Shown: positions 24,594-64,000 of the stretch, piece by piece | Layout: every line of letters begins with the position of its first letter | Numbering within the stretch: the first letter of the stretch is position 1 | Origin: Ruditapes philippinarum | Taxonomy: Eukaryota | Direction: 5' to 3' | NCBI RefSeq assembly: GCF_026571515.1 | Contig: NW_026857242.1 | Location: forward strand, 62,001 to 126,000 | DNA length: 64,000 nucleotides | Program-made: the position numbers and the translations under genes | The notes under the pieces: model-generated | What the model was told of the DNA's origin: nothing | What the model saw: only the letters and a program-made list of their open reading frames with translations | Database searches by the model: none

Positions 24594-27500
24594 ATGGGTT
24601 GCGGAGGATCTAAGACCGCAGGAACGACTCCCAGAGGAGGGAGAAACACCAAGGTAATTATCTTGTCCTAAGTAATTGATTCCTGTAAAGAAGATACAAA
24701 AACTATTTGATAATGTAGGTTACAGTGTGTTTGTTAATATGATGTTTATAATTCCGTAATTTTCCACATTTTAGATCTTTAAATAGTAAATACTGAAATA
24801 TATTTGAAAATAAGGGTTTCCATTCCCCTTATTTCATCCTAAATGTTTATAACTGGGATAAGTTGTAGGCTCAATTTGAATTTGATAATGATTGAATGTT
24901 GAAAATAAGTTACATTTATTTTTTTTGACATGTGTTTAAGGACAACAAAAAAGGAAGGAACAATCAGGTATAATATATATAGCCAATACCACTAATAAAT
25001 AATTGTCACAACGCTTATTTCTTGTTTTCGTATCTATAACCTGTATCATCATTTGCTTATTAGTTTGAATATATGCATTCACTTATTCAGCACTGGTAAA
25101 AGAAACATAGCAAATGTTATAAATCCCATTGTTGACACCTATTAAATTGCCTTTTTGCGAATATTTCTACGCAGTGAACTTCACGCTTTTCGACCATTCT
25201 TCGCATATACAGTACATTTGGCACCTTTTGAGTGTTGTTCGTATAACATTTAACGTATACTATTTAAATCTGTTTACTTTAATGGCCTAAACATTACAAC
25301 AGTTTAGGAATTGTAGGATTATTATTATTTTATGTTAAAGGAAAATGCTCTACAAAGCCATTATGTCATTCTCCAACGTTAGATTTACTGCCGACATACT
25401 TTTGAGTTTCTTAATATATAATAATATGTTAGCCCTACTTTATGTATTAATACCACTTTTACTACTATACTTGCTTCGAGTTCATATTTTTGTTTTCCCT
25501 TCATTACAAACTAAAAGTTATAATAATGCACGGGTATTTTATGTACAGTTGACTCATGTTTAAGTGGTTAGACACCTTTGCATGCTGGTCGGTCTGTATT
25601 CGTTTATCTTAAAATACAGCAAAAATGCAGATACATAAAACAAGGGTCCACAAAAAAGTTAGTAAACAAACTTATTTTAAAAGTCACCATTTTTTCTTAT
25701 CTCTAGTCACTTTGCATAATACTTCTTAATACCCTGCTTTCATTTGCTTCACAAGTACCGATTGATGTATGGCATGCACTTAGATATTAAAATTCTAAAG
25801 AATTTAACTTTTACGACCGTCAACCTAACCAGGACGTGAATGGAACTTTGTCTTCCCTTTTTGATTATCACTTTTTGTGAACGATTAGTGCAAACATTTC
25901 TGTCTAATATACACAAGTAGCACTAAATATGGTAACCACAGAGAAGTTCCAATAGGTATAGCCGATATATTTAGCATGCAGTTCTAAACTTAAACCTTAA
26001 TCTGTAAAATAGTACCGGATTATCATATAAATCATGACTAAAATACTAATAGATATTATATTATATTATATACACTCATAAATGTAGACAATGTAGTAAA
26101 AGAAAATTGTGATGTTTTACGTATATTATTTTAAAAGGAATGCAAAAACATATTTCCATACATTTCTTTATCCATTTATATTTATTAGTCAATTTTGTCT
26201 CTGATCTGGAGTATGTATGTATTAAGCAAATGGATTGTATTACACATATTTCCTTGGTGAATTATTTTCATAATATGTTTACTTTTCTAATGAAATATTC
26301 TTTTGAATTATTTTAAAGGGTGGCAAAGGAAACAATCAAGGAAAAGGAAAGGGGAACAAAAACAAACAGCCCGTAAATGAGAAGGGTTATAAGGTAAACA
26401 CTAGAACCTTAACAAAATAAAACTTTGTAATTATTTTTAATGGAAGCGGTAAAAAGTAAATGCGGCCTTTATCTAAGTTTTCATCAAGACAATAAGTTAA
26501 AAAGGACAGTTCCATATTTATTCAGCAACAGATTTGAATGTGCACACATGTGCATGTATCTGATCGTTAACGATGGTGGTGTTGTTCGTAATTTTCACTA
26601 CGGATAAAGGCACCGCATCGTTCCTGGGCTGGCTGTTAAGAAGTTTACCAGTACTAGTTGCCTTCACTGATAAATTCTGCAGAGGTACAGTGTAAATATC
26701 CGTAGAAATGATTTCATTATCAATCACAACGAAAGTGCTCTGCGCCGTCCGGGAATCAAACTAGGGTCGCCCGATCCGAAGGACCAACGCTCTACCTATC
26801 GAACTAACCGGACAGTTACGGTCGTTTACGATTATCTGCAACTTAATTTTGTATATTTCAGAAACGTATTAGGGAGAATCTGCGTCATGCTGCGGCAGGT
26901 AATGATATAGATGAATTACAGAAATGTATGGAAATATTTGATAATAATCACATGGAAGACGGGGGAGACTACACCGAAGCTGAACAGAGACTAGACTTTC
27001 TTCAAGTTAGAAAAGGTAATTTTAACAAATTTCTGTTAAATATTCATTTACACATCTTTAATGCCTGGAAGCCTATGGCGAGTCCGGTGGCCTTTGCAAG
27101 CACAGTTAAGATCACCGTGGAGAAAAAGGGATGTACGTAAGACAACACAGAGGTGAGATACCAAAACGTGACAGAAATAATTGCCGGGGATGCCGAGTCA
27201 GCTTTTCACACTGTCAGAAAATTGTCACAGTAGCCACAGTGCGAATCGTAATAGGTTGAAGACAACGGTATAAAACACGAACGTTTGAAATAGGCAAACA
27301 TAAAATGTGTAGTAACACGATTGGCGTCGGTTCCAGTAAGGTGTGTAAAGAGCCACACCAAGCTGTAAAGTATTATTTTAGATGTGTGTCGAATATTGAA
27401 TAGCTGTTTCTGTAAACTGAGGTCAAATTTTTAAATAACACTAAGGAAGCGAGGAAGAATGAACAAAGATAGTTGAGTACAAAGAGTAGTCCGAATGTTC

Positions 27501-30500
27501 TCTTCTCAGGAAAGCACCACGCGATCTAGAGGCGTTTCCTGTTCTATCGTCTTCTTCGTTGGAATACATGTTTACCCGTCTTAAGTATCTTAATATGGTC
27601 GGGTGTTTTATTTAATACCAAAGCGAGGGCACACACATTCTCCAAAGCTCTCCCGAGGCATTGACAGAACATGAAAAGCATATCCAACCTGGATGAAGTG
27701 GTGAATAACGTGTGGTAACCAACCAGAACGCATCGGACCAGTGTGCCTTGTAGAAACCGCTTCCAATTGCTTGTCACGGGTAAAGTGATAAACTGTGAGA
27801 ACTCAGCACAACCTAACGTAAAAACTTTGGTATAAATACAAAGACATTTGAATTTTACACGGCGCAATACGTTTTAGAAAAAACAATACCGTTGGCTTTC
27901 ATTTATTTCACCATTAAAGCAAGAAAATGACCATAAAGGATAGATAGGTGAACAACCATCTAAGTTCAGTGATAAACAAATTACATGTTGTTTCCCATTT
28001 TTGTAGGAATTCTAGAGAAACTGAAGAATCATATAAAAGGTCAGACGCACTGATTATCTATTATATTTATTTGTTTTACTTCTTGCAGAGATCCGGGATG
28101 CATGTATGAGGCGACATCCGGTTGTGTTAGAGAAAGCAATACAGAGGGTGGAGGCATCTCCATATAAACGGCAACTGAATGCCTACCTTAACAGGGCATA
28201 TTACCTGAAAAAACATCAAAATGAACTTGATACGTATGTCCAACTATACGGTCTTACTTTTACTTTCATGAAAAAAATTAATTCAATTTGTTTACTTATA
28301 TTCAGATTTATTTATCTGGCATACCTATAATAATAACTATTCTTTAAAGATATGAATATACAAATTCTACATGTTGACCTGATTTTGATATTCTAAATAG
28401 ATTTAAAAATGCAATGGTTGTAAAATGATATGTATGTATTGTTAACATATGACAATCTCATGTATGATTTATCTGAAAGATAAAAATATTGTTGAAATAT
28501 GTATGTCTTAAGTTTAAGTAGATATACCGTTTGCCCGACAGCACCATATCTATCCAAAATAGAACAATCTATGTTCTGGGCACACTTTGAATATGATATT
28601 ATGAAGCCGCGTCATGACAAAACTAACATAATGCGTTTGCGACCAGCATGGATCCAGACCAGCCTGCGCATCCGCGCAGTCTGATCAGGATCCATGCTGT
28701 TCGCTCACCAACCCTATTACAAGTAGAGAAACTGATACCGAACAGCATGTATCCTGATCAGACTGCGCGGATGCGTAGGCTGATCTGGATCCATGCTGAT
28801 CGCAAACGCACTATGTTGGTTTTGTCATGACGCGGCTCATATGTAGTATTTGCAACTGATATAATGAAGCCATATTGAATATGACAATGCTTTTAAAATC
28901 ACTAAAGATACTTGTCAAAGCAAATAAATGAAACATGTTTACAGAACGGACGAGCCAAACAGGTAAATAGTAGAGATAGTAGACAGTTTTGTAACACAGT
29001 CAGGTTTCAGATCTTATTTATAGAAAAAAATGCACACATTTAATACATAGAAAAATATTTTTTACATTTGTGAACAAGATTACAAATTATGATACATGAG
29101 TCTATATAAAACGTGTTACCTCTTTAGATCGTACTCCTGCAAAACAAATCATTAACATTTTGCGCGAGGACGTTCTCTGGTGTAATACAAGTATTTGGAC
29201 CTGTTCTTCAGTCTTCAGGGATTTTCTTACTCTAATACTTAACACAGAAACTGTCTAATTAGATACTGGTCAAATTTTAAGACTGTGTAGTTTGGTTTGT
29301 ATCTAAACTGGTGACATAGTACTGTCGTCACCAAGAGATACAACATAAAAGAAAATTTCAAATTTGTCTTAGACATGTAGTATAATGGAATAGAGAAACT
29401 AAGATTCTCCAAAGAACGCCCCAAAACGGCAAAATTGAAAATGTTGCAGGCTTGGTTTGATTAAACCTGTTCCTAGACGGTACTGTCAAGTGCAAACAAC
29501 CGTTCACGTCCCCTAGCACCGGCTTGAGCAGAATTCAATATCTAAACATGAAATGGCAAAATTTTGAATTTAGTAACAGATGTGTTACAACAGCTACCAA
29601 GCTATCAAGCTTCTGTTTAGTGTGTTTACAATTGTCAAATTGCTTTGCAAATTCATGCATGTATGCTTGACATTGAAGTCGTCTGACATTTGAAAATAGT
29701 TATGGGCAACAACAGCGCAAGATTTATCAACAACTATAATGGCTTATAAATCTATGCAGAAATAATGATGCGTATCACTGAACGTATCAAGAGAAATTTG
29801 ATAATGTGCGAAAATGTATGAGTTCAGTTGACGTCATTTCCTATATCTTTGGAACTTTTTATTAGGATTCATCAAACAATAATTTAGTGAATATAATACA
29901 TTATTAGAATAAGATAAAACATCAAGCTTTCATTTATAGCTCAAAGTTCCAATTGAACTTTTCATTTATAGTAATCAATTAGCTTTTGCTAATCATTTGC
30001 TGATATTTTATGTGAATAATTTGCATAATATATAGCTAGATGTGTATATTTTATTTTGATTGTTTTCCTTGTTAGACATTGCTTTACTCTCAAATTGAGA
30101 TTCAATGCGTTAAACTGGCTGTTTTCTTTGAATAAATGACGAACTGATAAGAAAATTATATGAGATCTTTATCATATTTTTACTAATCTTGTTGTAGTAG
30201 ATGGGTATTGACTATTGTTCATCAGATTCCAAAATAGACTGGATGAAATTTCAAACAGTGTTCTACATTAATAATTGATACCCTAAAACATGCAATACTA
30301 TTGATTCTTTTAACGATTTATGATGGTTGAAGTATTCTGTACAAATATTTGGTGGATAACTAACATTTTGTATATTTATAAATTTTACAATAGTCTATTA
30401 TCACGTAAGCCATGTGTGATAAATAGAATATCATATTCGCGTAGGTCAATACTAAATTTATTGAGCTCGTTGGATAAAACAATATTTAAACAATATTATA

Positions 30501-33393
30501 TTCTCCAGAGGCTCGTATAATATGATTGTATTCAACTCGTTCAATAAATTTAGTATTACACCTTCACTCATCCAATATCCTCTATATACTACTAGAAAGA
30601 CATTTAATTTAAACTTCAAATGTGTGTATAATATCTCTTGCATACTCATAACAATCAGAATTTAAAGTTCTGGGTTTAGATACAATTGTTACATACATGT
30701 ATAATATTAGTGTTTTCCCATTTGTATTTTCAGATTTCGGCATGATATAAGTGACCTTGATCAGTCGACTATTTCAGAGATTCGTAGTTACCACCACCCT
30801 CCTAACGGTGTACATGAAACAATGTGTGCTACATATATGATAATTGGATATCCAGAAAAACACCTCCTGGTAAGTTTGTTTTATCCTATTAATGCACTAA
30901 TTGTGAGAGTATATTTACGAAATGTTAAGAAGAACTTCCACGACATTCAAATACCATGAATGAAGGTCTATGCCAAATTGTATTACATGTATGTAAATAA
31001 AGTAGTTTAGATGGCCCGATACTAGAGTTTTTAATCCAGTTACGTTTTTTTTTTAAATTAATAGAAAGCAAGTTGTAAACACTGTATGTATCTTTTATTT
31101 AAAAAATGAAGACGTTTGTGTTATTCAAATGAATCCATTCACATTTTACGTAATGTTTCGAGTATGACACGTTTACTTGTTGATAGATTTTATCATTGTT
31201 ATTATTTTTAATTGTGTCATGCTAATACAGAAGGTATGTTTATGAAATTTATATCATTTTACAATTATACTCCTTTTATCACATATATACACATATATAT
31301 TCAACTTCTATTTTATCTTTGCTATGACAGCAATTTTATAATTTGCTTACGTGAAACATTTGACTCTTGTTCTTGATTATATTCACCTGTTTATTTGTTA
31401 TACTATCACTATCACATTGTACTATATTCTGATCTTCTATGTTTATACTTTACCCAATATCTGTTCCACATATTTTCTTTCTGCTGTGTAAAATCTTGCA
31501 TATGCCTTCTCTCAATATAGTATAATATTCTAGACAAATCTTGAGTGAAGAATTCTGTCTTTGTTTTTTTATGTTATTTTTTTCAAACTAAAATTATTGT
31601 TTATTTGTGTTTGTTTAACAAAAAAAAAATCGCTGTGCCATTTATAAAATAACTATGCTGTATACATAAAGATTCCAGTTCGACAGAACATGTTCAGTTT
31701 CAGTTTCAATGCTATATTGCAAAACAGAATAAATTCTACTTTTTTACAGATTATTTAACAAAATATAAAAGATATATGTGAGTTGTTCAAAATTGAATAA
31801 TACAGAACTATCTATACTATATCATCAACAAAAGTAATATATTTTGTCTTATTAAAACTAATAATGACCAAGTTCTAAAACTGGATTAGAAATAAAGTGT
31901 TTAAATTGGATTAGTCTACAATGGGTACATAAGTATTTCAATTATTGATAAAAAAAAAACCAATATAAATGTATCTTTTGAATATTTACATAAAGTATTT
32001 CTCGAAACAAATGTTGGTAGAGTTTGAACATATTCATATTATAAATAATAATAATTTGTTCTAGAACACTTGCTATCAGATCATACATCTCACACGTGCA
32101 CTTACCAACAACATCTGCATATAATTATTTTATGGTTTGTTGTCATAATACTATAATACTATAAAAATAATTATTTATGGTATAACAGACTGTCAATTAT
32201 GGACCGATTCCCTAAACCATACGGTTCTTTTTTGTTGATAGTCTTATTATTTTTGTCTTCAGGACTGGACTGAAATAACAGCTTTGATGGGTCGCTATGG
32301 TAAAGACAGTTTGATAAGAGAGGTTCAAACAGTAGACCCCAACAAGATAGACAAAACAACAGCTTTAAGGGCGAGGAATTACTTGGGTCAGTACAGCTTG
32401 GAGGAGATCAGAGTAGGCAGTACTGGTGCAGCGGCATTTTATGTATGGGTAAGGAAATCCTTTATTATCAAAACAAGTCTTGCGTGCTGAAGAATGTTTA
32501 ATTTTTATTATAACTTGGCACAAAAAGAATACCTTTCCCAGTTATAACATTTAGATAAAACAATAGAAGAAGATGTATTTTCAATAGACGAAATGAAAAT
32601 GTTAGCAAAGGAAATTAAAGTTTCAGTCTGAAATACTGTGTTAGACTAAAATTAAAGTGTCAATATTAATAGATTCACACTTTAAACAATAAACAAAAGT
32701 ACAAATATTGGATGCTTAAATTGCTGTCTGTGAAATTTTAAACTCTTCTCTTCAAATTGTCCAAACATAAATGCCCTTTGTATCGTTAAAAAGGCTTTTA
32801 TATGTTAAGATTTATACGCATCCATTTTTTGTTGTTTATTTCTTATATATTTTTTTTATTTTTCATTGAATACTACTAGTATAGTGTTTGTATTTATGTA
32901 TAAATATTATACATGTATATACTTTTTATAAGTAAAACATTTATTTAAGTAATGGCTAATGTAATGGCTAAATAAATTGTATATTCAGGCATCAAAAATG
33001 GTCGGCAAGCCAGACGGCAAAGCCACAAAGGGTGAAGATACTTCTCCCAAAAAGTTAACTAACTCCGGCGGAAAAGGACAACAGGCGTCCAACAAAGGGG
33101 ACAATCAGCCGAAAACACCAACCGCATCAATGCGAGATGAAAATACTAAGCAAGCCAAGCAGCAATCGAATATGAAACAAAAGAATAACGCGCAAAATAA
33201 CGCCAAAAATAACACAAAGCAGACACAAAATACAGCAAAGCAGACACAAAATACCGCAAAGCAGACACAAAATACCGCAAAGCAGACACAAAACACCGCA
33301 AAGCAGACACAAAACACCGCAAAGCAAGGAAAAGACAATAAAACCAAACAAGCAAACGGCAGTGTCAAAGCAGGGTCTACAAAGAAGGGGTAG
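24594..33393 (+). CDS. Gene B: N-myristoylation/palmitoylation-motif protein with helical repeats, a dynein MTBD-like domain and a basic Q/N/K repeat tail (395 aa)
   Basis: Exons 24594-24653, 24941-24967, 26319-26393, 26862-27015, 28089-28233, 30734-30869, 32263-32448 and 32989-33393 all have GT-AG boundaries and join in frame (1188 nt). The protein starts MGCGGSK and is colinear with the C-terminal third of gene C. Confidence 0.85.
26560..26813 (-). mobile_element. tRNA-derived SINE (Meta/Deu-domain-like body) in a gene B intron
   Basis: The minus strand begins gtccggttagttcgataggtagagcg (box A-like), then gtttgattccc (box B-like), then gattgataatgaaatcatttctacgg. Confidence 0.7.
28602..28839. 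mobile_element. Full-length palindromic MITE (family M1)
   Basis: Near-identical arms to 5636-5876, ending tgacgcggctca. Confidence 0.9.
29400..29580. repeat. Dispersed repeat family R2, partial copy
   Basis: gacggtactgtcaagtgcaa..ccctagcaccggcttgagcagaattcaa matches 16890-16960. aaaatgttgcaggcttggtttgatt matches the reverse complement of ~56300-56330. Confidence 0.75.
30423..30584. mobile_element. Degenerate palindromic MITE
   Basis: aatactaaatttattgagctcgttggata and tattcaactcgttcaataaatttagtatt are inverted repeats around a gaggctcg core. Confidence 0.65.
33205..33326 (+). repeat. Coding 21-bp minisatellite (KQTQNTA x~5) in the gene B last exon
   Basis: aagcagacacaaaa(t/c)ac(a/c)gca repeated in frame within ORF 32977-33393. 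Confidence 0.95.
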
Positions 33394-38538: not shown

Positions 38539-41500
38539 ATGGGGAACGGTAATTATAAGTATAAACGACCTCGTTCACATATTCGGCTTCTTCCCAGAGA
38601 GCCATTACAAGAAAAGGTATACCGACAGTCTGTTTTATCAAACAACCAGATGAGTAACTATAAAACTTTAACAATTAACATTGTAGTACTTTTTGGTGGA
38701 CATCTGTTTCTGGTATTGACAAAGTCATACATGTATTTGTGACAATTGTTGAGCCATCCAAGTTCAGAATACTGACAAACATTCAGTTCAGATGAATTCT
38801 TCTTCTCTGTGTTACGTTAAGAGGAAAACTTTTTAAGATTATTTCGGAGTTTATTTCCAAAATTGATAAGAGTATTAATATAAAAGTACTGCTGCGGCGG
38901 GATAGCAGTGCTGAAATATTTCTATTTAGATGAAATTAATTGTATGTAACTTTAGCATTTTTTGTCTCTTTTTTCACAGTTTAATATTCCAGAAGTTGAA
39001 AATGGTTATCCGGTGCCAAAGAACGCATCTACACCAAAGAAAGATATTTACAACCCTAAAGACAATAGGGATATCTACTTTCATGCTTTAAATGTAAGTT
39101 TACTACAAGTAATGTGAGGTAATACAGACCAATTATACAACAAATAAATTTATTTATAAGTTGTTTCCCTTGTTCAATCATTATTATATAGAGACATACG
39201 TTAAAACTACCTTTGATTCACCATTCAGTTCTAGCAATTTTGCCAGATTAAAAGATTAAAATTGATTGTTGTATAATATAGAAACGGAAAGAGGACAATA
39301 AAAGTTTTGTGCTGACAGAGTTTCTACGGTTGCTGTATATTCGGATGTGTACGTGTTTGACTGTTTTTAATTAATTCCAGGCGCCTAAAGATATAGAGAA
39401 CTCCTGGGATGACCTCGTGCATTATTTAACCTCTATATATCGTACTGACATGATGAAAGTCCGATCCATCTTTTCCTGGCTAGGCGTGCAGGAAATAGAA
39501 AGCGAGAACTACTTTTTTGTGCCAACACCAAACAACATTGATGAAATAACTCCGCGGGGTTACAAAAAGATCATTCAGGACAGAGAAGGGTCATATGCAA
39601 CCTTGTTTGCCCTCTTATGCAGGTTTGCAAATTCGCATTATCTTTGAAAACTATTCCGTGGAAAAGTATGCTTTGGACAACTTAAAGTTTACAAATTGAA
39701 TAGTGTTTTTGTACCCAATTAAGCACAACGTTATTGTGACAGCAAACAGACCAAGTCAAACATTAATCTCTTGTTTATGAAAAATAAGGCAATTTTTTTT
39801 TAGTTTAGAAACACCAGATATATCAATTTTTCAAGGCAGTACTGTTTTACGTAACTGGTTTCATATTTTATACCAGGATGATTCATTGTTACAGCTATGA
39901 AGTAATTTGAAATGACAACTATCAAATCTCATAAATTGGGCTTTTATGGAAAGTAAAGAAATTTGGTATTTTCATACGAAACATTTTCTAGTTGATTGTG
40001 TTTCTTCATATTAGTTATCAACATAAAATGTGCTCTATTAACTTTCAATGGCTTAAATAGTTTCATTTTACGACTGACAGCAGGATGCTTTTAATGTGGG
40101 TGTATATTTTTACATATCTGTTTGTGCTTACAGTTTGATTTTGTTGAATGCACGGATGGTATAATAGTTCTTATGATTTATAATTGGAATCAAATAATAA
40201 AGAATTGAAATATGACTTCAGATTCTAATTTTGAATTATATTCTATACAGATTAAAATAAGCCAAGTCTATCTAATGTGATAGAATGCTTTCGTTGCATG
40301 CACATTTTGCAAAAAGGGGGAAGTATATGAAACTGGCAAGTTAAAAAAAAACCTCCCAACTGTTATAATTTTCCATCATTTCATGTTCTAGCATGCAAAG
40401 CTTTCCTTCTCAGAAAAAGTTGCTTTTGCGACATGTTTTCTTCATCAACCATGCATGTTAATTCTTTGGTAAAACACTTGTTTCCCACGTAACCAAAGAA
40501 TGTTCGTCAATATATCTTTAAACAGTTCATGAATAATTATTTTCATTATTTTTTTAGGAAAGCCGGTATAAGGTGTGCAATCATCAACGGTTTATCTAAG
40601 GGTTTTGGATATGATGTTGGTGAAACGGACGTATCTCACTTGAGGGATAGGTGGAATGCTGTGTACATTGACGGCTGGCGTTTGATACACCCGTTATGGG
40701 CTTTCAAAAATATCATTAGCTTTAAACGAGGGAAATGGGGACCTGAGAATGAACTTGATAAGGTCAAAGTTGAGGATATTGATGACGAGCAAGAAAAAGT
40801 CGTTCAGCACGATTTTAACGAGTATTATTTTATGGTTGATCCACTGGAACTGATAAATGTATGTTTGCCTGATGATGAAAGATGGCAGATGATCACACCA
40901 AAGATTTCGAAAGATAAATGGATAAACATTCCTTTTCTGATGAAGAGGTACCACATGGAAAAATTTAAAATCACAAGTGAGTTTAAGTCGACAATTAAGT
41001 CAAAACATGGCGTATGTGGGCTCGTAATTCACGCGCCATCAAACAAAGATAGGGACTACCAATTAGCATATGATCTTTTCTTTAATTATGCTGAACAAAA
41101 GGTTGAGCTGGATGATCCCATTCATTTGAACAGGTACGTGATGTTGGCGAGAGATAGTTCCAAAAATAACTGGTCATTGGAGGCAAGAATGCCTGTTGCC
41201 GGAGTTTACAGAATCACTGTCTATGGTGGACCAAGTATGAACTCAAAGCTGCCATGGATCTGCGATGTTGCAGTTAAATGTAACAAAACATACAAGAAAA
41301 TAAAGCCGTATCCAGACTGTCCTAAACTTGGTTTTGGTCCAGTGTATATGACAGAAAGAGCGGGACTCACTCAACCATCTCACCCGAACGGAATGCTTTT
41401 TGTAAAGCCAAGGTCGACCTACCATATCACCTTCAAACTTAAACAATCAATTAAAGAGAAAGCCAGAATAATCGGAGAAGGCGTAAAGGACAGTGAAATG

Positions 41501-48925: not shown

Positions 48926-49003
48926 ACTGCGCGGATGCTCAGGCTGGTCTGGATCCATGCTGGTCGCAAGCACACTATGTTGGTTTTGTCATGACGTGGC
49001 TCA
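48926..49003. mobile_element. Right-arm fragment of MITE M1
   Basis: actgcgcggatgctcaggctggtctggatccatgctggtcgc...tgacgtggctca. Confidence 0.85.
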
Positions 49004-50663: not shown

Positions 50664-51519
50664 TAAACGTTTTGCTTTCAATTACAGGTACATTGTATAT
50701 AACTGTTATGTTTGATGGAACTGCTTCAAGTCACATATCATTGCTGTTTGTTATGGTATATTCTAGTTTTATATTATCACCTAGATCTATACCGTTATCC
50801 GTGTAAACTGGTATTTAGTTCTATAGTGTAAACTATATAACAAAATCGTGTTTATTTTTTATGTAGACTGTCACAAAACCGTATGTTTTATTCACTACTT
50901 CGACAATTTACTTTAAACTGATTAGAGACGCCCATGTTTACATTTGAGAATAAAGAGCTACATAAAGTATAGAGAAGTGTCCTCGATTGATAACTTACCC
51001 TTACTTGAAATGATAAAGACAAACTGTTATCACGTTGAGATACATTTCTCTACAGCAAACAACTATCTAGTGACAGCCTTTATGTTATAGATTTGTTCAG
51101 TTATAGATTTGTTCACTTTAGTCATTGGTTTGTGCTACAATTTCATGCGATTTGCACATCACACTCGAAATTGATAGCGTGGTCTTATGGCTAACAATGA
51201 CACACAATATTGTACGACTTTTTGTTTAAAAAAAATTCAAATTCATTGTTTAACTAGATTATCAGAAAGAATAAGAATGTCCAGGTGCTTGTCGCATTAT
51301 GAAACAACTTGCCGAATAATTCACTTTTTCTTTTGTTTACATGCTGCTTTTCATGTCAAACACTGGTCAAATCTAAACTGTAATTTGATTTTGTTTATCC
51401 CGGGGATGGCATATATTACAACCCCTTTATTTAATTTTGTTAATTTTATATACAAAAAAAGTGAAAAGGCGTTCACGTTCTGTATACCATTCTGTAAATT
51501 AGCAATCATTTATCGCTTT

Positions 51520-51695
51520 AAGTGGTTAAGGTGTCTGCCTCTCAACTTAGGGATCATGGGTTCGAACCCTAATCGGGTCACACATGTCTCTTCATGACAC
51601 CAGTACTGGTTGGTTCCAGGAAGCAGACTCGAGAGTGATTAATATAAGTTGCAAGAACTTGTTCGCAATCTAGCTTAAATAGATATGTTTAAACT
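51520..51695 (+). mobile_element. tRNA-derived SINE (V-domain-like body)
   Basis: agtggttaagg (box A end) and gggttcgaaccc (box B), then gacaccagtactggttggttccaggaagcagactcgagagtgat, ending in an AT-rich tail. Confidence 0.75.
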
Positions 51696-52969: not shown

Positions 52970-55900
52970 ATGGGTTGCGGAAGTTCATCAGAGGCATCCG
53001 ATCCAAATAACAATGAAAAGACCGGCAAACAGACGACAAAACCAGTCCCGAGTAGATCAAACAAGACCGGGCAAGAAACTGGGAACGACCAGAATCAGAA
53101 TAAAGGGGAACGCGGAGCACTTCCGATTTTGAAGGACGAGCCAGAAATCGAAGATGTAGGTATCATTTTGTTTTCCTTATTTCTTTTCCTGTAATTTAAT
53201 ATGTTTTGGGTTTTTTTTTCATTAAAGTGTGATCTCGCTTTTGCGAATCACGCGGATTTAGTTTATCCATCAAGTGTCTTATAGTTTTGTTTTAGTAAGC
53301 ATTCGCTACTATAGAAAATTTAAAAAAAGACTGGAATACTTATTCAAAGACACTACAATTCAGTCGAGTTGTTAAAAATATTCCCGCCTTGATTTGAAAA
53401 AAAAAATGTGTTTCATTAATAAATGTATTTTTACAAGATAAATGGATTTTTAACAAATTCAACACATAAAAAAGTTAGATATTTGATAAGGCTGTAATTT
53501 TGTAAGCAATATCTATCTGAACAGCTACATTTAAATGTTCTTCGGCGCAAACTATTTCATTTAACTCCACGCGAGGTTAAATGTCTGACAATCCTGAATG
53601 TCTACTAATATACACAATAATAATATAAACATGCAAGTCGTCGAGTTTCTTAAACCACATTAAGATAAATACTAATGTATACATGCATGTCTGTCATATA
53701 GATATATGATATTATTTTATATCTGATTTTTTGTTTTGTTTTTAAAATGCAATCAGACATCTTGATCTTATGGGTGATAGAGTGTTGAATGTAAATAATT
53801 GTTAGATATTAATATAATATAGGTAGTTTATTATACCGGGATCTATCAAATATACATGTACAATGTCATGTACAACGTTATTAATTAAAGACCCGTTATG
53901 CTTAAGAAATGCTTTTCTTTTTATTTCTAAAAATATTATATTTTTGTTGTCCTGTTATAGTTATACACATTGGCCTAGTACCTGAAACATCTTTTGCGGC
54001 TGATGTTTTTGTTTAATTCGTATAGTTATAATGAGTTGGAACTTAAATTCTACATTGTTTACATTTTGCTACTTTTATGACAAATAATTTAGTGTCGTTG
54101 TCTTCAGGTGATAAGTTTAGTATCTAACATGCTTTCATTTAAGCATTATTAAACGCATGTTTACCATTTCAGTAAAAAGAATTATCAATTTCAATAAATA
54201 AATTGTTTCTTAGGCATAATATGCCTTTAAGTATACTAAAAATTGTTGCGTACAGTACGCTTTATTCATTACTCGTACATGTTCAGAAGGCAATTAATGA
54301 AAAATACAACTTTTCAGATTTTCCTTTGGGTTTAAGTAAATAAGTTCGACAGATATACAATGAAAAAAGAAAGTGCTCGCATGCTTTTACGTTAAATCAC
54401 ACTTGCTTTCAGATCGAATATTGTCTGATTTTATTGACCTGTCAATTATGAATACATTATAGCACTCATTTAAATATTCGACCCCACTTCGGTTTGGTCC
54501 GTGTAGTTTACGAGAATTAATGTGGAGTATAAAAGTCATATTTTGAAAGTCAGGCCAGCTTAATGTGAAGGGTTTCGTTAATTCGCAATAGCGCAGTCGG
54601 TTAAGAGAATGCCTGATAATTGAGAGGTCTGTGGTTCGATCCTTACTGATGACATTCTTTTAGGCTTTACTCTCTCTTTATTTTTGCAATATATTTTAAT
54701 GGAACCGATTTGTAGTGTGTTTTACGGCATTGTAAAGACATTTACTGATTTTAATCCGTTTTAATTTAAACATGAATTCTTAAAACATGTTATTTAAAAA
54801 GAGTATAGACTTTGCAAAATTAAGTAAAACATAATAAAACAAAACAAACAACATAAAAAATAATCATGTGTAGCTTTAATAATGTTGAAAGTATTAATAA
54901 GAAAAACAACAACATGGACCAACGCGGTCTCGAACTTAAAACATCTATGGCACTTATTATTGATTATAAACTCGTGCTTTACCCTATTGCGCTATAACGA
55001 TCAGTTCACTTAGTTCATACAAATTAAATTAAATTCCATCGTACAGCGTACATCTCACGGAGCTGACCGAAAATCTACCGAAGATTAATATATTGTGTGC
55101 ATCGACCGTGTAATCAGTATGTAATTGACAGGTTAATAAAACCAAACAATAGCTCATCAACACAATTGTTTTTTTAGTTTATCTATGCATGCTCTATAGT
55201 TCATGTGTACATTTACTGCATTAAGGTATATGTGTTCCATAAATGAAATAGAGAGTGAAGATTTACGATTTGAGTAAAAGTAAACGTATTCCATAGTTAA
55301 CAAGAAAAGCATTGATGCAAAGCATCAAAGGGCGACGCCAAAAGAATTTGATCCAGATTTGCACCTAAATACTTAACAAAAGATGTGTACTTTATAGCAG
55401 TACCATTACATGTGACCTGGAGGCTATGGCCAGGTTAAGTTGAAACTTAAACCAAAAAAGAATAGACTCTGTCTTGCCAAGATGCAAAGGCAATTTATAG
55501 TCAATTAAGCAATCTTATAAGACTCATGTTATAAGAAAGAATTTCTTCAGATTTCATTTATGAGACACAAGGATTCCTGAGTCATCAGCATATAATCACA
55601 GGCACGAGTATCAGACCTTGGATGAAAAAATATGGCCAGATTGATAAAAAAACCTGTGTTCATCTTAAACATCTTAAAAAATAAAATGTAAATAATGACC
55701 CCCTTTAAAAATATACTTCAAGTTGAAGTATATTTTTAAAGGGGGTCATTATTTACATTTTATTTTGGTTGTTGACACTTTTAAGATGAACACAGGTTTT
55801 TTTATCAATCTGGCCATATTTTTTCATCCAAGGTCTGATACTCGTGCCTGTGCATTATAATAAAAGCTTATTGCTTAGGGTTGAAGACATGTGATTGACA

Positions 55901-58900: not shown

Positions 58901-61900
58901 CATTTGAAATCTAGCGGCAGCCAGTCCGATCCTTGGGCGTGACGAAATTTCCCCTCAGACATAAAGATTTTATAGTCATTGAAATAGAAGCCTTTTACTT
59001 GCGGAGAACTAGGTAATTGTTGGTAGGTAATCCAGGAAATCCCGGTTGGAAGGCATAAAATGCAAAACAACCAAAAAAAGAATATGAAACTTAATTACAT
59101 ATTTATTTCAGTAAATTGTTCCCTTCTGATTACTTTATTCAGCTAATCAATATTATAATGCTATTGAAATATCAAATAATTATATGTTGCCTTATGTATA
59201 TTTAAATAATTTAAACATTGCATTATGTATGAGCTTGGATTCAGATACGCAGAAGCAAAATCATATTTATCTATGTGTTTGATTTTACGTATGTGTTTGT
59301 TTTTACATCAAAAAATAAATAATTAACGTCAGAATTACTCTAACAATGAGGTTTAACTTTAGAGAGCCTTTTTTATTAAACCAAGCGTTTAGTTTAGGGA
59401 CTACCTCAGAAGCGTAAACTATAAAGAAATAATGATATATAAATTTATAATATACGAGTACAAGGAACTGAACAATAAACAAACAAGAGCAAAATCAACT
59501 TCAGTGTAGTCCCGAATTTATTTACCTCATTGTACGTAGAGTGTTCTGATGTTGAAACATGTGTTATACATGTAATTTGAAAGCTCAAATGAACTCAGTT
59601 TGTGCGTATAATAAAACAAAAATCAATTAACAATAAAAACGGTTTCATATGATTTATTTTGTATCAAAGCCAGTATGTGAAACGATTTTAATAGCCAGTT
59701 TCTTAATTGGTCTTAAATGGCATTACGTTATGTCAATAAGTCGATGATAGCATGTTGGATAATATCAGACAAGAAGAGAACAAAATAATAAAGTCATTCC
59801 TAATCTATATTAATTTCAATCCCTTCTTAAATAAAGAATCATTTTTTATTTATGGTGTCAGATATTATAAATATATAGGTAAAGGTTACATATAAAGCAA
59901 ATGCTATAAATTTTATATACACAATGTAAATATATGTACTAATTACGATTATTCTGATAATTTTTAAACTTATCTAATTGCATTAATTTTGTGATCTAAC
60001 TATAGATTGTTATCATCTACATGATTTTTGTTGTTAACCTTTGTTCTATTTTGATATATAATGGTTTTGTCTATTTTGTTTGAATTCAGGTGGACGTAGC
60101 GAAGACAGAGGCAGGATATCCTGCCGTCAAAGTGCCAACAGAAAAAAGGGACGCCATCTTTAATGCCAGTAAAATGAAACATATTGATGAAAAAGCGAAA
60201 CAGGTAATGTTGTATCCGTCTATGTTGAGTACCTTGTTTACAATTTTTTGTTAAACAGGCAAATACATGTATCTTGAATAAGATGCAAATACAGCCAGGC
60301 ATGTGGAAAAGTAATCACATTCAAACCAAAACCCTTGAATCTAAACCATTACCAATAAAACAAATCATTCAGAACTTTAAATTCATCCTGTGATGTTGTC
60401 CATTTAAATTGAACAATCATGATAAAACAATCAATTTAAAACTGTATTTCAGACCCCTGCTGATAAGGCAAACGACTACCAAGAATTAATAACACACCTG
60501 ACATCATTCTGTAAGACTGATGTGGAAAAGGTCCGCTCCATCTTTTGTTGGATGACCTGTCAGGACGTGGACAATGCAGACTACTCTTCTGTTACCGATA
60601 GCGACACTCCATTAGGGTTTCTAAAGCTAATCCGAGACCACAGAGCATCCAAAGGTTCCTTCTTTGCAGTTCTGTGTCGGTAAAATATTAAATAATTATT
60701 TACAATTAGTATTACATTTCATGTGGAAGATTTAATCGATTAACAATCCTTTTATATAAAATGATACTTGATGTAGTCTAGGGCAAAACTAATCGTGATT
60801 TTGAGTATCATTTTCCATATTAGAGATACATTGATATATATTTGAGCCCATAAAATACATTTTTTATACTATATAGCTAGATAGTCCCCAAATATGTATG
60901 CATGTTTGACGTTTTTAAACTATTACCGAGCATTTCGGATATACATATAACAAGTTCAATGTGTTCTCATGCATAATTATAACATAATTATAACAATAGG
61001 CATGCGAACATACCGTGCGTTATTATCAACGGTTATGGAAAAAGTGTCTCCTATGATGTTGGCGATCCTGACGAGAAGGTGATGACACTAAATAACAACT
61101 GGAATGCCGTGTATGTGGCTGGGGGATGGCGTCTTGTGTTTCCTTTATGGGCAAGTTCTGGTGTTGTAGGACATTCCAGTGGGGCTTACACCAAAGTGGA
61201 GTCAAAAGGTAACACCGAGTAAATTAAATTTTTAAACATACACAATTTATAGATTTATGGCTGAATATATATTTTGTAGCACACAGTAGTCGTTGTCTCT
61301 TGATTATTATACAAAAATGGTTGAATTTGAAGAGTTCGGCAACATTTCTTATACTAATCAGCCAAGATTGTCAGGCTCCTTTACAAATATAAAGGTAAAA
61401 AGGAAGAACACCTTTAAGATGGTGACAGCTAGCTATGAGCATGTCAGATTTTGCGCATAGCAAGCCGATTGCGTTTATTTGAATTGATTCGTAGGACGAA
61501 TTTAAAAAGATTAGAAAGGATTAAAAAAAATTATGATATTTTATACAGATTGAACTATCATTTATTCCTGGCTTTACATACTTCTTCTTCTTATGATATG
61601 AGAAGACGCGTTCTGATAATCGCGTTTCACACGTCACACCTTTAATAACTAAACATTGCTATTATTTCTACAAACTGAAGTTGATATATGTTTGTGCTTT
61701 ATTCCAGACCCCATACCGGGTAACTTTATTCATTTTTAATTTCACGTGTAGAAAGATGATGACATAAAAAGTAGATAAAATTATAGGAGTAAAAAAACAA
61801 CAACAACAAAAAAAAAAACAAAAAAAAAACACGTAGATTTCTACTTTAAAAGTAGAAATATATTTAGTAAACGTTATTTTAAGTTTTATTCTTTTGGCCA

Positions 61901-64000
61901 GATAAAAAGTAAAAAACAGTGTTAGATAGACTGTATTTTCTATGGAATGTTCCGAACTCAATTTCTTTGATACGATCATAATTTCAGTATTTGCTATGTC
62001 AGTTTAGAAAGTATGCTTTCCTTCCTTAAATTCTTTCAAAACGAAAATATATATAATTATATATAGTTTACATCATAGTTTTATTAATTCTTTTTTTTTT
62101 TCTAAATAATTGCTGTAATAAATCGCAAACATTAATTTTTAAATATTTTGTATGCATTAAAATTTTAGTTTTTTTTTTTTTTCCCCAGTACTTTTTCCAA
62201 CTCTTTTTTAAATAGAAAAAACAAATCCTCCATGTTACTAAAACCACAAGGGAAGTTGAATATCATTAAACCCATCATTTTAAACCCGATTAGTCAATCA
62301 TACTTTACTTACTTTGAGTTTTCTACCAAAATAATGATTTCATTCTATATAATAATAATTTTATGATAAATGATGATTTCTTTCATCAATTTTTATTTTC
62401 TCCTGATTTCTTATGTTATTTATTTGTCATCAAATTCTGATAATTTTTGGATTTAACTTTTTATGGTTATATGACTTTTTTGACCACCATTATTAAAGGC
62501 TTGTACATAAACAGGCTTTATCAAAGCAATTTTACCGCTTTGTGCGTTCTTTGGGGATTTCGTTTTCTCTATTTTGTAGATTTTAATTTTTTTAGCTCAA
62601 GTTCGATTTTCTTATGTCTGTTTATTTAAGCAAACTTCTTACATTTAACTAACTTTTCGTATGTATTTAAGATTATGAAGAACTTCATAAATCTCTTGTT
62701 ATACAAATAAAGTTTCGTACCATACTTTTTATCATAACAGTCAAATATACATACACATGTACGAATCAACCATTTTCCTAGTTTTGTATAAACATAATGA
62801 GAATATACTGTTAAAATGTGTACAAGAAGATCAATAAAATATGTTTTAAATCTAAAATGCATGTACGAATATTAGCTAAATTATTTGTAATCAGGGTTAA
62901 TCTCGATATAAAAGACAAAAAAAAAGAAAAATAAAAACGTTTTTTAAAATTTTTTTGATATTTGAAAAAAATATGATTAAAGAAAAAAGGTATTAATAAT
63001 TTGTAATATTTCAAATTTCCCTAGTTCCCGGGCATCTTTTTAAAATAAAAATAGGGGAAAAACTGTTTTGTGAAAAAGGGAAAAGGAGGCTGCTGGAACC
63101 CATATTCAAAAATTGGACGATTACTATTTCTTTACCGACCCAGAAGACTTTGCATATGTGGCACTAGCAAAGGAGAAGCGATGGCAGCTTTTGGCTAGGC
63201 CTTGGACTGTGCAAAAATTTGCTGACGTACCGTTTTGTTCACGCTATTATTTTGAAAAAAAAAGTAAAGTTTTTAGTGTTTGTTTTGGGGGACTAAAAAA
63301 AAAAAAGGGAAAGGAAAAATGTCCCTGTGGGAAAATTTGGGGGTGAGGGAAACCCCAAAAAAATGGGATTTTATTACGAATTATATTACAACCCTAAAAA
63401 ATTTGGGGAAAAAAATATCGGGCAAACTTTGCAGCTAAATAATTTTGTACTGTTAAAAAAAGATCTGATTTTTAAAAGGGATTTTTTTGGGAAAACGGTT
63501 TTTTCCCAAAAAAGGAATTTTAAAGCTGGGAGATAGTAGGTGGAAGGCATTAAAAAAAATAAGAATGTGTTTCATTTTTAAAATTTTTGTAACGAAGTTC
63601 AGGAAAAACTGTCCCCATAACCCCTTTAAAACCGGGAAAAGTTGGGTATGGACCCCAAAAAGCAGATACTGAAATTGCCGGAAACAAAAACAACTTTACA
63701 TCAATCCGGAATAGTCAAAGTGTTTGCACGAAAGGAAATAGTTCTTAACTTCAACTTAACAAGAGACATACAAGTAAAAACCGAGCTAGTACACAATACT
63801 TTATCAAAAGAAGAATTATCGAAATATATAAAACAGACACAGTCAAACAGAAATGTTAACGTTCAAGTGAGCGTCCCGGAGAATGGAGAGTATGCTCTAA
63901 CAATGCATTCAAAGCAAAAGAATGAAAGCGAATTCAAGAACGTTTGCAATTATCTGCTCAGTTCAGAACATGGAAAGAAAAAGAGGATTCGAAATTGGGA
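52970..64000 (+). CDS. Gene D: second KY/hillarin-like transglutaminase pseudoenzyme with an MGCGSS N-terminus; 3'-incomplete, last visible exon has apparent frameshifts
   Basis: Exons 52970-53155, 60090-60203, 60453-60679, 61000-61208 and ~63055 to beyond 64000. Motifs include GYP, KVRSIFCW, FFAVLCRHANIPCVIINGYGK, WNAVYVAGGWRL, DDYYFFTDP..RWQLL and PENGEYAL..KNVCNYLL. The frame is broken in homopolymer runs at ~63250-63690. Confidence 0.82.
54421..55149. mobile_element. ~730-bp element with terminal inverted repeats and a tRNA-like segment in each arm
   Basis: The left end ttgtctgattttattgacctgtcaatta matches the reverse complement of the right end (ttgtttggttttattaacctgtcaatta). An inner pair tcggtttggtccgtg / cacggagctgaccga and box A/B-like motifs occur on both arms. 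Confidence 0.65.
55597..55852. repeat. Near-perfect 256-bp palindrome (young foldback/MITE-like element)
   Basis: cacaggcacgagtatcagacc...ggtctgatactcgtgcctgtg. The centre ...atacttcaa-g-ttgaagtat... has a 1-nt spacer at 55722, and there is one short asymmetric internal mismatch. Confidence 0.92.
56061..56365. repeat. Dispersed repeat family R2, longest copy
   Basis: Reverse complement of 16881-17121, plus an extension shared with 20181-20250 and 29400-29470. Confidence 0.88.
58245..58765. repeat. Degenerate ~60-bp tandem repeat, ~8-9 copies
   Basis: atgaaatagaaagtgcacat.. recurs at ~58308, 58373, 58437, 58501, 58557, 58614, 58674 and 58733. A related fragment lies at ~55180-55300. Confidence 0.85.

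What the first reader, a model, noticed from the sequence alone, without database searches (positions are those of the whole stretch)
24594..64000. Tandem family of lipid-anchored proteins carrying a motor-less dynein microtubule-binding domain: candidate membrane-microtubule tether system
Seen in sequence: the spliced C-termini of gene B (ISDLDQSTISEIRSYHHPPNGVHETMCATYMIIGYPEKHLLDWTEITALMGR..LIREVQTVDPNKI..QYSLEEIRVGSTGAAAFYVWA) and gene C (VLEMKQSTISELTSYSYPTGVIFDILKATLILLGESPLDIQTWEATKAIFKR..IMRRVRAFDVSKV..KYDDDSARAASAGAGTFYKWI) are homologous to each other. Established knowledge: the dynein heavy-chain stalk-tip MTBD follows the pattern E-[VI]-[RK]-S-x3-PP..V..A..LLG(ES)..DW..I..[MF]..F..FD...I..Y..E.V..AS.A.G...[KV]W, and both proteins reproduce it in order and spacing. 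Gene C also has a Pro (KLGPFNK) near the position of the CC1 kink. There are no AAA+ modules. The proteins instead start with MG acylation motifs, and C and D carry a KY/hillarin scaffold domain. Inference: an MTBD was shuffled out of dynein onto a membrane-anchored scaffold and then expanded in tandem, giving static cortical or ciliary microtubule tethers. I am not aware of a functional description of such proteins.
Basis: partly seen in the sequence, partly recalled or inferred. Interest (0 to 1): 0.92.

Follow-up and report, generated by a model that had tools for sequence, protein, structure and literature searches.

The report
Motor-less dynein microtubule-binding domain proteins
Three neighbouring clam genes encode non-motor proteins that end in a true copy of the small domain dynein uses to grip microtubules, mostly behind a lipid-anchor signal, so they are probably passive membrane-to-microtubule tethers that nobody has described.

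Summary
Three same-strand genes (B, C, D; Ruditapes philippinarum) lie in 24594-64000. B and C each carry a conserved two-exon module. D's copy lies about 1 kb past the window end.

**Homology to the dynein microtubule-binding domain (MTBD) is shown.**
- The exon-1 profile hits only dynein heavy chains in the PDB, 29 of 29, best E 7e-4.
- The exon-2 profile hits the adjacent part of the same chains.
- A 45-protein family profile gives E 2e-5.
- One relative passes Pfam's own cut-off for PF12777.
- An AlphaFold model of gene B's protein (pLDDT above 90) matches dynein stalk/MTBD structures at Z 12-17. Unrelated folds score 7.7 or less.

**What is absent.** There is no AAA+ motor and no return coiled coil. 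The KY transglutaminase core has lost its catalytic Cys and His.

**Anchor and range.** B and D start with a myristoyl/palmitoyl motif, as do 30 of 63 relatives. C's start is atypical. The module occurs across spiralians, a hemichordate, amphioxus (behind a transmembrane helix) and a coral, also in EF-hand proteins.

Microtubule binding and the tether role are inferred, not tested. I found no paper on these proteins. The scan flagged the same fusion on another piece of this genome (s1-810608).

The parts
24594..24653 (+). Gene B exon 1: start codon, MGCGGSK dual-acylation motif and the start of a polybasic linker
   Evidence: 100% match to P0024 residues 1-20. Residues 1-50 hold 12 K/R against 2 D/E.
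24938..28234 (+). Gene B exons 2-5 (24938-24967, 26319-26393, 26862-27014, 28088-28234): polybasic linker and helical hairpins, with the start of the CC1-like helix. An alternative micro-exon lies at 28946-28963.
   Evidence: Exact mapping of RefSeq isoforms X1-X3. AF2 helices 50-160 have pLDDT above 90.
30735..30869 (+). Gene B MTBD exon 1: end of the CC1-like helix, then H1-H2 (..STISEIRSYHHPP..)
   Evidence: On its own it hits only dynein MTBDs in the PDB (7 of 7, best E 0.05).
32263..32448 (+). Gene B MTBD exon 2: H3-H6 (DW...FYVW)
   Evidence: Profile A2 aligns it to yeast dynein MTBD residues 57-119.
32989..33393 (+). Gene B last exon: 134-residue K/Q/N-rich basic disordered tail, including a 21-bp coding repeat at 33206-33326
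   Evidence: The tail has 26 K/R against 7 D/E and pLDDT below 50.
38539..38616 (+). Gene C candidate first coding exon (MGNGNYKYK...). Gly2 is present, but the myristoylation context is atypical.
   Evidence: An AG acceptor lies upstream and a GT donor at 38617. No transcript or homologue confirms it.
39381..39622 (+). Gene C exon for the first half of the transglutaminase-like core. The nucleophile position holds Glu.
   Evidence: Paralogous to gene D 60426-60680 (7e-21). Splice phase fits the next exon. Catalytic position read.
40558..41716 (+). Gene C large exon: second half of the dead transglutaminase core plus the KY-type Ig-like domains
   Evidence: Pfam PF23265 Ig-like_KY, 2e-27. Boundaries.
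42003..42171 (+). Gene C helical-hairpin exon
   Evidence: Open frame with an AG acceptor and GT donor. Phase 1 fits the next exon.
42534..42814 (+). Gene C: helical hairpin, CC1-like helix and MTBD H1-H2
   Evidence: 51% identical to gene D's exon. More divergent than its paralogues, with no dynein hit on its own.
44027..44212 (+). Gene C MTBD H3-H6 (..FYKW). The terminal exon downstream was not found.
52970..53164 (+). Gene D first coding exon: MGCGSSSE dual-acylation motif
   Evidence: Aligns to the N-terminus of P0077.
60090..64000 (+). Gene D exons (about 60090-60206, 60450-60680, 60998-61213, 63056-63343, 63354 to the window end): dead transglutaminase core and KY Ig-like domains. The gene runs off the window. 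Its MTBD exons and stop are in L002 (L002:1501-1776, 1980-2165, last exon from 2845).
   Evidence: tblastn with P0077, 48-71% identity. PF23265 at 5.6e-11 on 63630-63998. L002 exons.

Best explanation
These genes encode non-motor proteins whose C-terminus is a true homologue of the dynein stalk-tip microtubule-binding domain (MTBD).

**Shown**
- The MTBD helices follow a single CC1-like helix and about 110 residues of helical hairpins.
- There is no AAA+ ring.
- The return helix CC2 is cut to about 5 turns in the gene D-like protein and is absent in B, so nothing like dynein's registry switch can control the domain.
- In C and D the module hangs on a KY/hillarin-type transglutaminase-like core plus Ig-like domains. 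That core has lost its catalytic Cys and His, so it is a scaffold.
- B is only anchor motif, polybasic linker, helices, MTBD and a basic disordered tail.

**Inferred**
- Gly2 is myristoylated and Cys3 palmitoylated in B and D.
- With the polybasic linker, this pins the N-terminus to a membrane inner leaflet.
- The MTBD binds the tubulin lattice constitutively.
- The proteins therefore act as passive membrane- or cortex-to-microtubule tethers. Ciliary membrane-to-doublet bridges are one candidate site.
For: **Sequence**
- Exon-1 profile A1: 29 of 29 PDB hits are dynein heavy chains at helix H1, best E 7e-4.
- Exon-2 profile A2: the top hits are the directly adjacent MTBD residues of the same chains.
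- Family profile A3: E 2e-5.
- P0171 passes Pfam's cut-off for PF12777 (33.5 bits against 24, E 3e-8).

**Fold**
- AF2 model of gene B's protein: pLDDT above 90 over residues 50-270.
- Foldseek: nearly all of the top ~37 hits are dynein stalk/MTBD. TM-score is 0.68 and rmsd 2.8 A to the microtubule-bound mouse MTBD 6rzb.
- VIA-align: Z 12-17 for dynein, then a drop to 7.7.

**Anchor**
- 30 of 63 full-length relatives start with MG..x[STAGCN].
- B's residues 1-50 carry a net charge of +10.
- The amphioxus member has a signal peptide and a transmembrane helix ahead of the same cytoplasmic module.

**Microtubule-contact residues, mapped from yeast dynein (PMC7042235)**
- The E3122 equivalent is Glu in 113 of 117.
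- The R3124 equivalent is R/K in 109 of 115.
- K/R sits at the K3160 equivalent in 171 of 178.
- Arg sits one residue before the R3201 equivalent in 178 of 209.

**Dead enzyme**
- 0 of 33 have Cys and 0 of 34 have His at the catalytic positions.
Against: - No binding, lipidation or localisation data exist.
- The K3117 equivalent is Gln in 100 of 118.
- The R3152 equivalent is T, E and E in B, C and D.
- The R3201 position itself is usually Asp.
- Without CC2, the conformation of H1 that sets dynein's affinity is undefined.
- Gene C has a degenerate H1 (PT for PP, Thr for the conserved Arg), an atypical N-terminus, no identified last exon and no transcript-derived protein.
- About half of the relatives' models lack the MG start. 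Some of these may be truncated models.
- The nearest solved relative of the KY part, FAP246, is an axonemal central-apparatus protein, not a membrane protein.
Confidence: 0.55

Rival explanations
1. The domain is a true MTBD homologue but no longer binds microtubules. It has been reused as a protein-protein interaction module for another partner, such as other filaments, septins or an axonemal complex.
For: - Three of the six yeast salt-bridge positions are not kept in B, C and D.
- CC2, which sets the high-affinity state in dynein, is missing.
- One non-dynein PDB chain, 7jtk_C in the Chlamydomonas radial spoke, also matches the model at Z 12.5. The fold may therefore exist in non-lattice contexts.
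Against: - The most diagnostic microtubule-facing residues, the H1 Glu and Arg and an H3 Lys/Arg, are 95-97% conserved over phyla.
- The paper notes that real dyneins also vary at the H3 positions.
- The module is 67-89% identical from molluscs to a hemichordate. That fits an invariant ligand such as tubulin.
Confidence: 0.25
2. They bind microtubules but are not membrane tethers. They are structural parts of axonemes or other microtubule assemblies, with the KY scaffold docking other subunits.
For: - The best solved match to the KY part is FAP246 of the C1b projection of the ciliary central apparatus (phmmer 1.4e-4; Foldseek 5e-16 over about 600 columns; its location from PMC9113940).
- About half of the relatives' models lack the acylation start.
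Against: - The MG..S/T start is strongly enriched, is paired with a polybasic stretch, and is replaced by a transmembrane helix in amphioxus.
- The FAP246 match is fold-level similarity of the KY part only.
Confidence: 0.15
3. It is a microtubule-targeted enzyme: a transglutaminase-like peptidase, like vasohibin, brought to tubulin tails by the MTBD.
For: - Vasohibins are transglutaminase-like cysteine proteases acting on tubulin (papers listed).
- Pfam Transglut_core is present in KY-type members.
Against: - None of 33 KY-type members has Cys at the nucleophile position, and none of 34 has the His.
- Gene C has E/D/H and gene D has R/N/F at the three catalytic positions.
- Gene B has no such domain at all.
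Confidence: 0.03
4. The resemblance to the MTBD is chance or convergence of a small helical bundle, or the exons are not real coding sequence.
For: - Single exons of gene C give no Pfam or PDB dynein hit.
- Helical bundles often reach middling structural scores.
Against: - Two independent exon profiles hit adjacent, collinear parts of the same dynein chains.
- The family profile gives E 2e-5, and one member passes Pfam's curated cut-off.
- Z 17 against 7.7 for the next fold.
- A RefSeq model exists with three isoforms.
- Intron-less transcript contigs of relatives carry the joined module.
- 745 sequence clusters match.
Confidence: 0.02

Closest known systems
Dynein heavy-chain stalk-tip microtubule-binding domain (Pfam PF12777 MT; PDB 3ERR, 6RZB, 6KIO, 5AYH)
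   Same: - Same helix order and signature motifs: ..EIRS..PP..V...M.A...LLG, W..Q.L.GK, ..R.VS.GA..FY.W.
- Same predicted fold (Z 12-17, TM 0.68).
- It is preceded by a CC1-like helix.
- The H1 Glu and Arg that contact tubulin are conserved.
   Different: - No AAA+ ring, linker or tail.
- CC2 is reduced to about 5 turns or absent, so there is no registry-based affinity control.
- The domain sits at the extreme C-terminus.
- The H6 Arg is shifted by one residue, and K3117 is replaced by Gln.
- Most members fall below Pfam's cut-off.
KY (kyphoscoliosis peptidase) / hillarin family: transglutaminase-like core plus Ig-like_KY domains
   Same: Genes C and D and many relatives carry Transglut_core and PF23265 Ig-like_KY in the same order. 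Databases name some of them 'kyphoscoliosis peptidase-like'.
   Different: - A C-terminal helical region and MTBD are added.
- Many have an N-terminal myristoylation motif.
- The catalytic Cys and His are absent in all 33-34 members examined.
FAP246, C1b projection of the Chlamydomonas ciliary central apparatus (PDB 7N6G, 7SQC)
   Same: It is the nearest solved structure to the KY-type part: phmmer 1.4e-4 and Foldseek 5e-16 over about 600 columns. It is itself part of a microtubule-bound assembly.
   Different: - The paper describes FAP246 with a guanylate kinase domain and an EF-hand pair.
- No MTBD was seen in it here.
- The similarity is at fold and family level only.
Lipid-anchored microtubule-binding proteins such as palmitoylated MAP6/STOP and SCG10/stathmin-2 (from my own knowledge, not tested here)
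   Same: Same logic: an N-terminal acyl anchor plus a tubulin- or microtubule-binding module in one chain.
   Different: The binding modules are unrelated. None of those proteins uses a dynein-type MTBD.

Membership tests
Dynein MTBD (PF12777 MT / stalk-tip fold) | Sequence match to the family profile | tested here: met
   - Family profile A3 against the PDB: dynein MTBDs at E 2e-5.
- Profile A1: 29 of 29 hits are dynein.
- P0171 scores 33.5 bits against the cut-off of 24.
- Most members, including gene B's protein, stay below Pfam's cut-off: P0059 scores 16.3 bits, and 6 of 45 reach E<=1.
Dynein MTBD (PF12777 MT / stalk-tip fold) | Compact helical MTBD fold in dynein's helix order | tested here: met
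   - AF2 model of P0024, pLDDT above 90.
- VIA-align Z 16.9 (5ayh), 16.7 (3err), 12.9 (6rzb, rmsd 2.7 A over 137 residues).
- The next unrelated fold scores 7.7.
- This is a prediction, not a solved structure.
Dynein MTBD (PF12777 MT / stalk-tip fold) | Sits at the tip of a long antiparallel CC1/CC2 coiled-coil stalk | tested here: not met
   - A CC1-like helix of 25-28 residues is present.
- After FYxW only about 10-30 residues follow in most members.
- In B the chain turns disordered after 5 residues.
- In the D-like model the last helix ends at the C-terminus.
Dynein heavy chain | AAA+ ring, linker and tail | tested here: not met
   - No AAA family appears in Pfam scans of P0024, P0077 and other full-length members.
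- The genome-wide PF12777 search finds the true dynein genes on other contigs, none on this one.
Dynein MTBD (function) | Binds the alpha/beta-tubulin intradimer groove through H1, H3 and H6 salt bridges | tested here: inconclusive
   Of six yeast contact residues (PMC7042235):
- The E3122 and R3124 equivalents are 95-97% conserved.
- A K/R sits next to the R3159 position and one before the R3201 position.
- The K3117 equivalent is Gln.
- The R3152 equivalent is K/R in 65% of the family but T, E and E in B, C and D.

Binding itself cannot be tested here.
KY / hillarin transglutaminase-like family | Ig-like_KY domain (PF23265) after a Transglut_core domain | tested here: met
   - Gene C large exon: PF23265 at 2e-27.
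- Gene D exon: 5.6e-11.
- The D-like protein P0077 has Transglut_core at 1.5e-7 and PF23265 at 2.2e-35.
- Gene B has neither.
Transglutaminase-like cysteine peptidases | Cys-His-Asp catalytic triad | tested here: not met
   Alignment A4 shows Cys in 0 of 33, His in 0 of 34 and Asp in 20 of 34. I placed the three positions against the canonical transglutaminase motifs from memory, not against a solved structure.
N-myristoylated / dually acylated proteins | Met-Gly start, small or uncharged residues, Ser/Thr at position 6; Cys3 for palmitate | tested here: met
   - B starts MGCGGSK and D starts MGCGSSSE.
- 30 of 63 relatives fit the motif.
- Gene C's candidate start MGNGNY does not fit at position 6.
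- Actual lipidation cannot be tested here.

The most novel reading that the evidence does not exclude
An undescribed, phylum-spanning family of 'orphan MTBD' proteins exists in non-vertebrate animals, in which dynein's microtubule-binding tip works without a motor as a constitutive anchor. The lipid- or transmembrane-anchored members would be the microtubule-membrane bridges of cilia or the cell cortex, whose molecular identity is still poorly known. The strongly conserved EF-hand member would be a calcium-sensitive version.
Probability: 0.25. Interest if true: 0.85.

Novelty: new variant of a known kind. Interest (0 to 1): 0.72.

Why it matters
The MTBD has been treated as a part peculiar to dynein heavy chains, working only under control of the stalk and the ATPase ring. 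This family shows the domain surviving and diversifying without either. It is conserved at 67-89% identity across phyla and joined to membrane anchors, EF-hands or a dead enzyme scaffold.

If it binds microtubules, three things follow:
- It is a new class of microtubule-associated protein.
- It is a natural experiment on what the MTBD does when freed from registry control.
- It would occupy dynein's site on the lattice, so it could compete with motors.
- It gives testable candidates for membrane-microtubule links in ciliated epithelia of molluscs and other invertebrates.

Databases currently label these proteins 'uncharacterized', 'trichohyalin-like' or 'kyphoscoliosis peptidase-like'.

Tried and rejected
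**Searches that gave nothing**
- Pfam on single exons gave no PF12777 hit.
- Gene C's exon alone gave no dynein hit in the PDB.
- The genome-wide PF12777 scan did not pick up this contig.
- Literature searches for dynein/MTBD with KY, 'MTBD-like', PF12777, and hillarin with microtubule found nothing relevant. A spiralian ciliary-band gene paper was checked and is unrelated.

**RNA evidence**
- The look-up of sequencing runs listed candidate runs.
- I sent those places to no search tool afterwards and masked them in my local BLAST.
- No read evidence was obtained.
- A search for transcript-derived fragments of gene C found only single-exon DNA fragments of related species.

Only database proteins that already carry the joined module were used.
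- Complex prediction with tubulin was not run.

**Left unresolved**
- Enzyme hypothesis: rejected on the catalytic positions.
- The identity of PDB chain 7jtk_C could not be established.
- Which dynein class donated the domain is unresolved. Score differences between classes are small.
- A shared intron position with an axonemal dynein gene is only approximate: 4 nt away and in a different phase.

Full report
**What is in the window.** The region is AT-rich, intron-bearing animal DNA.

- Gene B is a RefSeq model, XP_060594843.1, 'uncharacterized protein LOC132749161 isoform X2' of the Manila clam Ruditapes philippinarum.
- Its 395 residues (P0024) map at 100% identity in eight exons, from the ATG at 24594 to the stop at 33393. 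Two further isoforms differ by micro-exons.
- Gene C runs from about 38539 to beyond 44212. Gene D runs from 52970 and off the window end.
- Both are paralogues with canonical splice sites and compatible phases.
- D's last three exons are in L002, just beyond the window.

**The two-exon module.**

- B, C and D share a module split by an intron at the same place.
- Exon 1 ends in ..T-I-x-E-I-R-S-Y-x-x-P-P-x-x-V-H..L-L-L-G.
- Exon 2 begins D/E-W and ends ..S-A-G-A-A-T-F-Y-x-W.
- A six-frame search of the clam's own genome finds 14 places with it. Two pairs of these look like allelic duplicate contigs, so at least 12 loci are distinct.

**Homology with the dynein MTBD: sequence.**

- The 42-residue exon 1 of gene B alone hits seven PDB chains. 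All are dynein heavy chains at helix H1 of the MTBD (best E 0.05).
- A 13-sequence profile of exon 1 (A1) gives 29 hits, all dynein heavy chains at that position, best E 7e-4.
- An 11-sequence profile of exon 2 (A2) gives as top hits the yeast dynein MTBD residues 57-119. These lie directly after the 19-53 matched by exon 1.
- So two independent pieces hit adjacent, collinear parts of one domain.
- A profile of 45 database proteins with the joined module (A3) reaches E 2e-5.
- A single brachiopod member gives 15 dynein hits among 16.
- Pfam's MT model (PF12777) stays below its cut-off for most members: 16.3 bits for P0059, and 6 of 45 at E<=1.
- It passes for one member: P0171 from Gigantopelta, 33.5 bits against 24, E 3e-8.
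- An ESM Atlas cluster of such fragments is already auto-named after PF12777.

**Homology: fold.**

- AlphaFold2 on gene B's protein with a 45-row alignment gives pLDDT above 90 for residues 50-270.
- Foldseek against the PDB returns dynein stalk/MTBD entries for nearly all of the first ~37 ranks. TM-score is 0.68 and rmsd 2.8 A to the microtubule-bound mouse MTBD 6rzb.
- VIA-align gives Z 16.9, 16.7 and 16.3 for whole-stalk structures and 12-14 for isolated MTBDs. It then drops to 7.7 for unrelated helical proteins.
- The one non-dynein chain in the top group, 7jtk_C (Chlamydomonas radial spoke 1, Z 12.5), I could not identify.
- A model of P0077 (mean pLDDT 86.6) shows the same helix pattern at its C-terminus. 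P0077 is 75-79% identical to gene D in the module.

**What differs from dynein.**

- No AAA+ domain appears in any Pfam scan of full-length members.
- The true dynein genes of this genome lie on other contigs.
- The domain sits at the extreme C-terminus. After F-Y-x-W most members have only about 10-30 residues.
- In the D-like model these form about five further helical turns.
- In B the chain becomes disordered after five residues and continues as a 129-residue tail with 26 K/R against 7 D/E.
- The CC1-like helix is 25-28 residues long. It is preceded by about 110 residues of helical hairpins, not a long stalk.
- Dynein's control of affinity by sliding CC1 against CC2 therefore has no counterpart here.

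**The rest of the proteins.**

- B starts MGCGGSK and D starts MGCGSSSE: Gly2, Cys3, Ser6. This is the classic myristoyl-plus-palmitoyl context.
- B follows it with a linker of net charge +10.
- Among 63 relatives of 300 residues or more, 30 start with a myristoylation-type motif, across molluscs and a brachiopod.
- Gene C's candidate start, MGNGNY, is atypical.
- C and D carry a transglutaminase-like core and KY-type Ig-like domains.
- At the three catalytic positions, 36 aligned KY-type members have Cys in 0 of 33, His in 0 of 34 and Asp in 20 of 34. Gene C reads E/D/H and gene D reads R/N/F.
- I placed these positions against the canonical motifs from memory.
- The core is thus a scaffold, not an enzyme. 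This rules out a vasohibin-like, microtubule-targeted peptidase.
- The nearest solved relative of this part is FAP246 of the C1b projection of the ciliary central apparatus.

**Range and other architectures.**

- A whole-library profile search finds 745 sequence clusters at E<=1e-3.
- Named members come from many bivalves and gastropods, Lingula, nemerteans, annelids, a bryozoan, an orthonectid, a hemichordate, amphioxus and a coral.
- Besides the KY type there is a strongly conserved group of about 530-600 residues. It has EF-hands and a charged coiled coil and is mostly labelled 'trichohyalin-like'. Its module is 67-89% identical across most of these spiralian phyla (63% in the hemichordate). 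The clam's own copy is L005.
- The amphioxus 'CLCA1-like' protein has a signal peptide, CLCA and VWA domains, one transmembrane helix (722-740) and then the same module in its cytoplasmic tail.
- B-type short proteins with MG start and basic tail exist in the pearl oyster (P0150, 45% identical).
- So the module is old and mobile. B is an old subtype rather than a recent truncation. Only C and D (51% identical in the first module exon) look like a local tandem pair.
- Several relatives are encoded whole on contigs about three times their length. P0077, for example, has 768 residues on 3667 bases. Given the introns seen here, these must be transcripts.
- That is indirect evidence that the exons are joined in RNA.

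**Can it bind microtubules?** The yeast study lists six salt-bridge residues (PMC7042235). The HMMER alignments reproduce their numbering. Across the retrieved family:

| Yeast residue | Helix | Family equivalent |
|---|---|---|
| E3122 | H1 | Glu in 113 of 117 |
| R3124 | H1 | R/K in 109 of 115 |
| K3117 | H1 | Gln in 100 of 118 |
| R3152 | H3 | K/R in 115 of 178; T, E and E in B, C and D |
| R3159 | H3 | Gly, but the next residue is K/R in 171 of 178 |
| R3201 | H6 | usually Asp, with Arg one residue earlier in 178 of 209 |

The same paper notes that true dyneins also vary at the H3 positions. The pattern is compatible with binding but does not prove it.

**Best reading and rivals.**

- Shown: a true MTBD homologue without motor or return coiled coil. 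It is attached to a dead KY scaffold in C and D, or to almost nothing in B. Lipid-anchor motifs are present in B and D.
- Inferred: constitutive microtubule binding, membrane anchoring and hence a passive tether.
- The recurrence of a membrane anchor by two different means (acylation and a transmembrane helix) is the main support for the tether idea.
- Rival 1: the fold binds another partner.
- Rival 2: the proteins are parts of axonemal or other microtubule assemblies rather than membrane links.
- Rival 3: an enzyme role, contradicted by the catalytic positions.
- Rival 4: chance resemblance, excluded by the statistics above.

**Novelty.**

- Eight full-text searches found no paper on a dynein-type MTBD outside dynein, or on these proteins. 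A 2026 review of microtubule-associated proteins does not mention it.
- Traces exist only as automatic annotations.
- Another first-stage note of this scan reports the same fusion on another piece of this genome (s1-810608).

**Limits.**

I worked beside those places afterwards.
- Gene C's last exon, and its expression, remain unconfirmed.
- No complex prediction with tubulin was possible, because no full-length tubulin could be obtained.
- The donor dynein class is unresolved.

Noticed in passing
window 2379-4036: A 44-bp satellite array of about 25-37 copies at 83-89% identity. It gives spurious repeated open frames on both strands.
   Followed up: partly
window 5496-5932, 28496-28892, 44985-45298, 48806-49038: Copies of one interspersed repeat in both orientations, 65-100% identical at the translated level. 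They lie in introns and between the genes, and are probably a short mobile element.
   Followed up: no
window 33206-33326: A 21-bp repeat, 5.8 copies at 95% identity, inside gene B's last exon. It encodes T-Q-N-T-A-K-Q units in the basic tail. Relatives have tails of very different length (43-188 residues).
   Followed up: partly
PDB 7jtk chain C (residues 437-595), against model m30771c6e5bee: The only non-dynein chain among the top structural matches: Chlamydomonas radial spoke 1, Z 12.5, rmsd 4.7 A over 150 residues. I could not find which spoke protein it is, or whether it is a second non-dynein MTBD-like domain.
   Followed up: partly
PDB 7n6g_6E / 7sqc_X0 (FAP246), against P0059 and model m2baf37b56e27: The KY-type transglutaminase-like plus Ig part has its nearest solved relative in FAP246 of the C1b projection of the ciliary central apparatus (phmmer 1.4e-4; Foldseek 5e-16 over about 600 columns).
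   Followed up: partly
L035/L037 (G000:C3487) and L041 (G000:C11122): An axonemal dynein gene of the same genome has an intron between ..ILLGQK and TDW... That is 4 nt from the family's conserved intron before D/E-W, and in a different phase. It is suggestive of exon-level origin but not an identical position.
   Followed up: partly
L007 vs L008 and L011 vs L014 (G000:C12157 and C7543): Two pairs of family loci on different contigs are nearly identical at the protein level. These contigs are probably allelic duplicates in the assembly.
   Followed up: no
P0049 (Branchiostoma floridae XP_035689228.1): A CLCA/VWA protein with a signal peptide and one transmembrane helix carries the same coiled-coil plus MTBD module at the end of its cytoplasmic tail.
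   Followed up: partly
L005 (G000:C2847) and P0221: The clam's copy of the EF-hand / 'trichohyalin-like' member. Its MTBD is 67-89% identical across most spiralian phyla and 63% in a hemichordate. It is probably the most constrained and possibly the ancestral form.
   Followed up: partly
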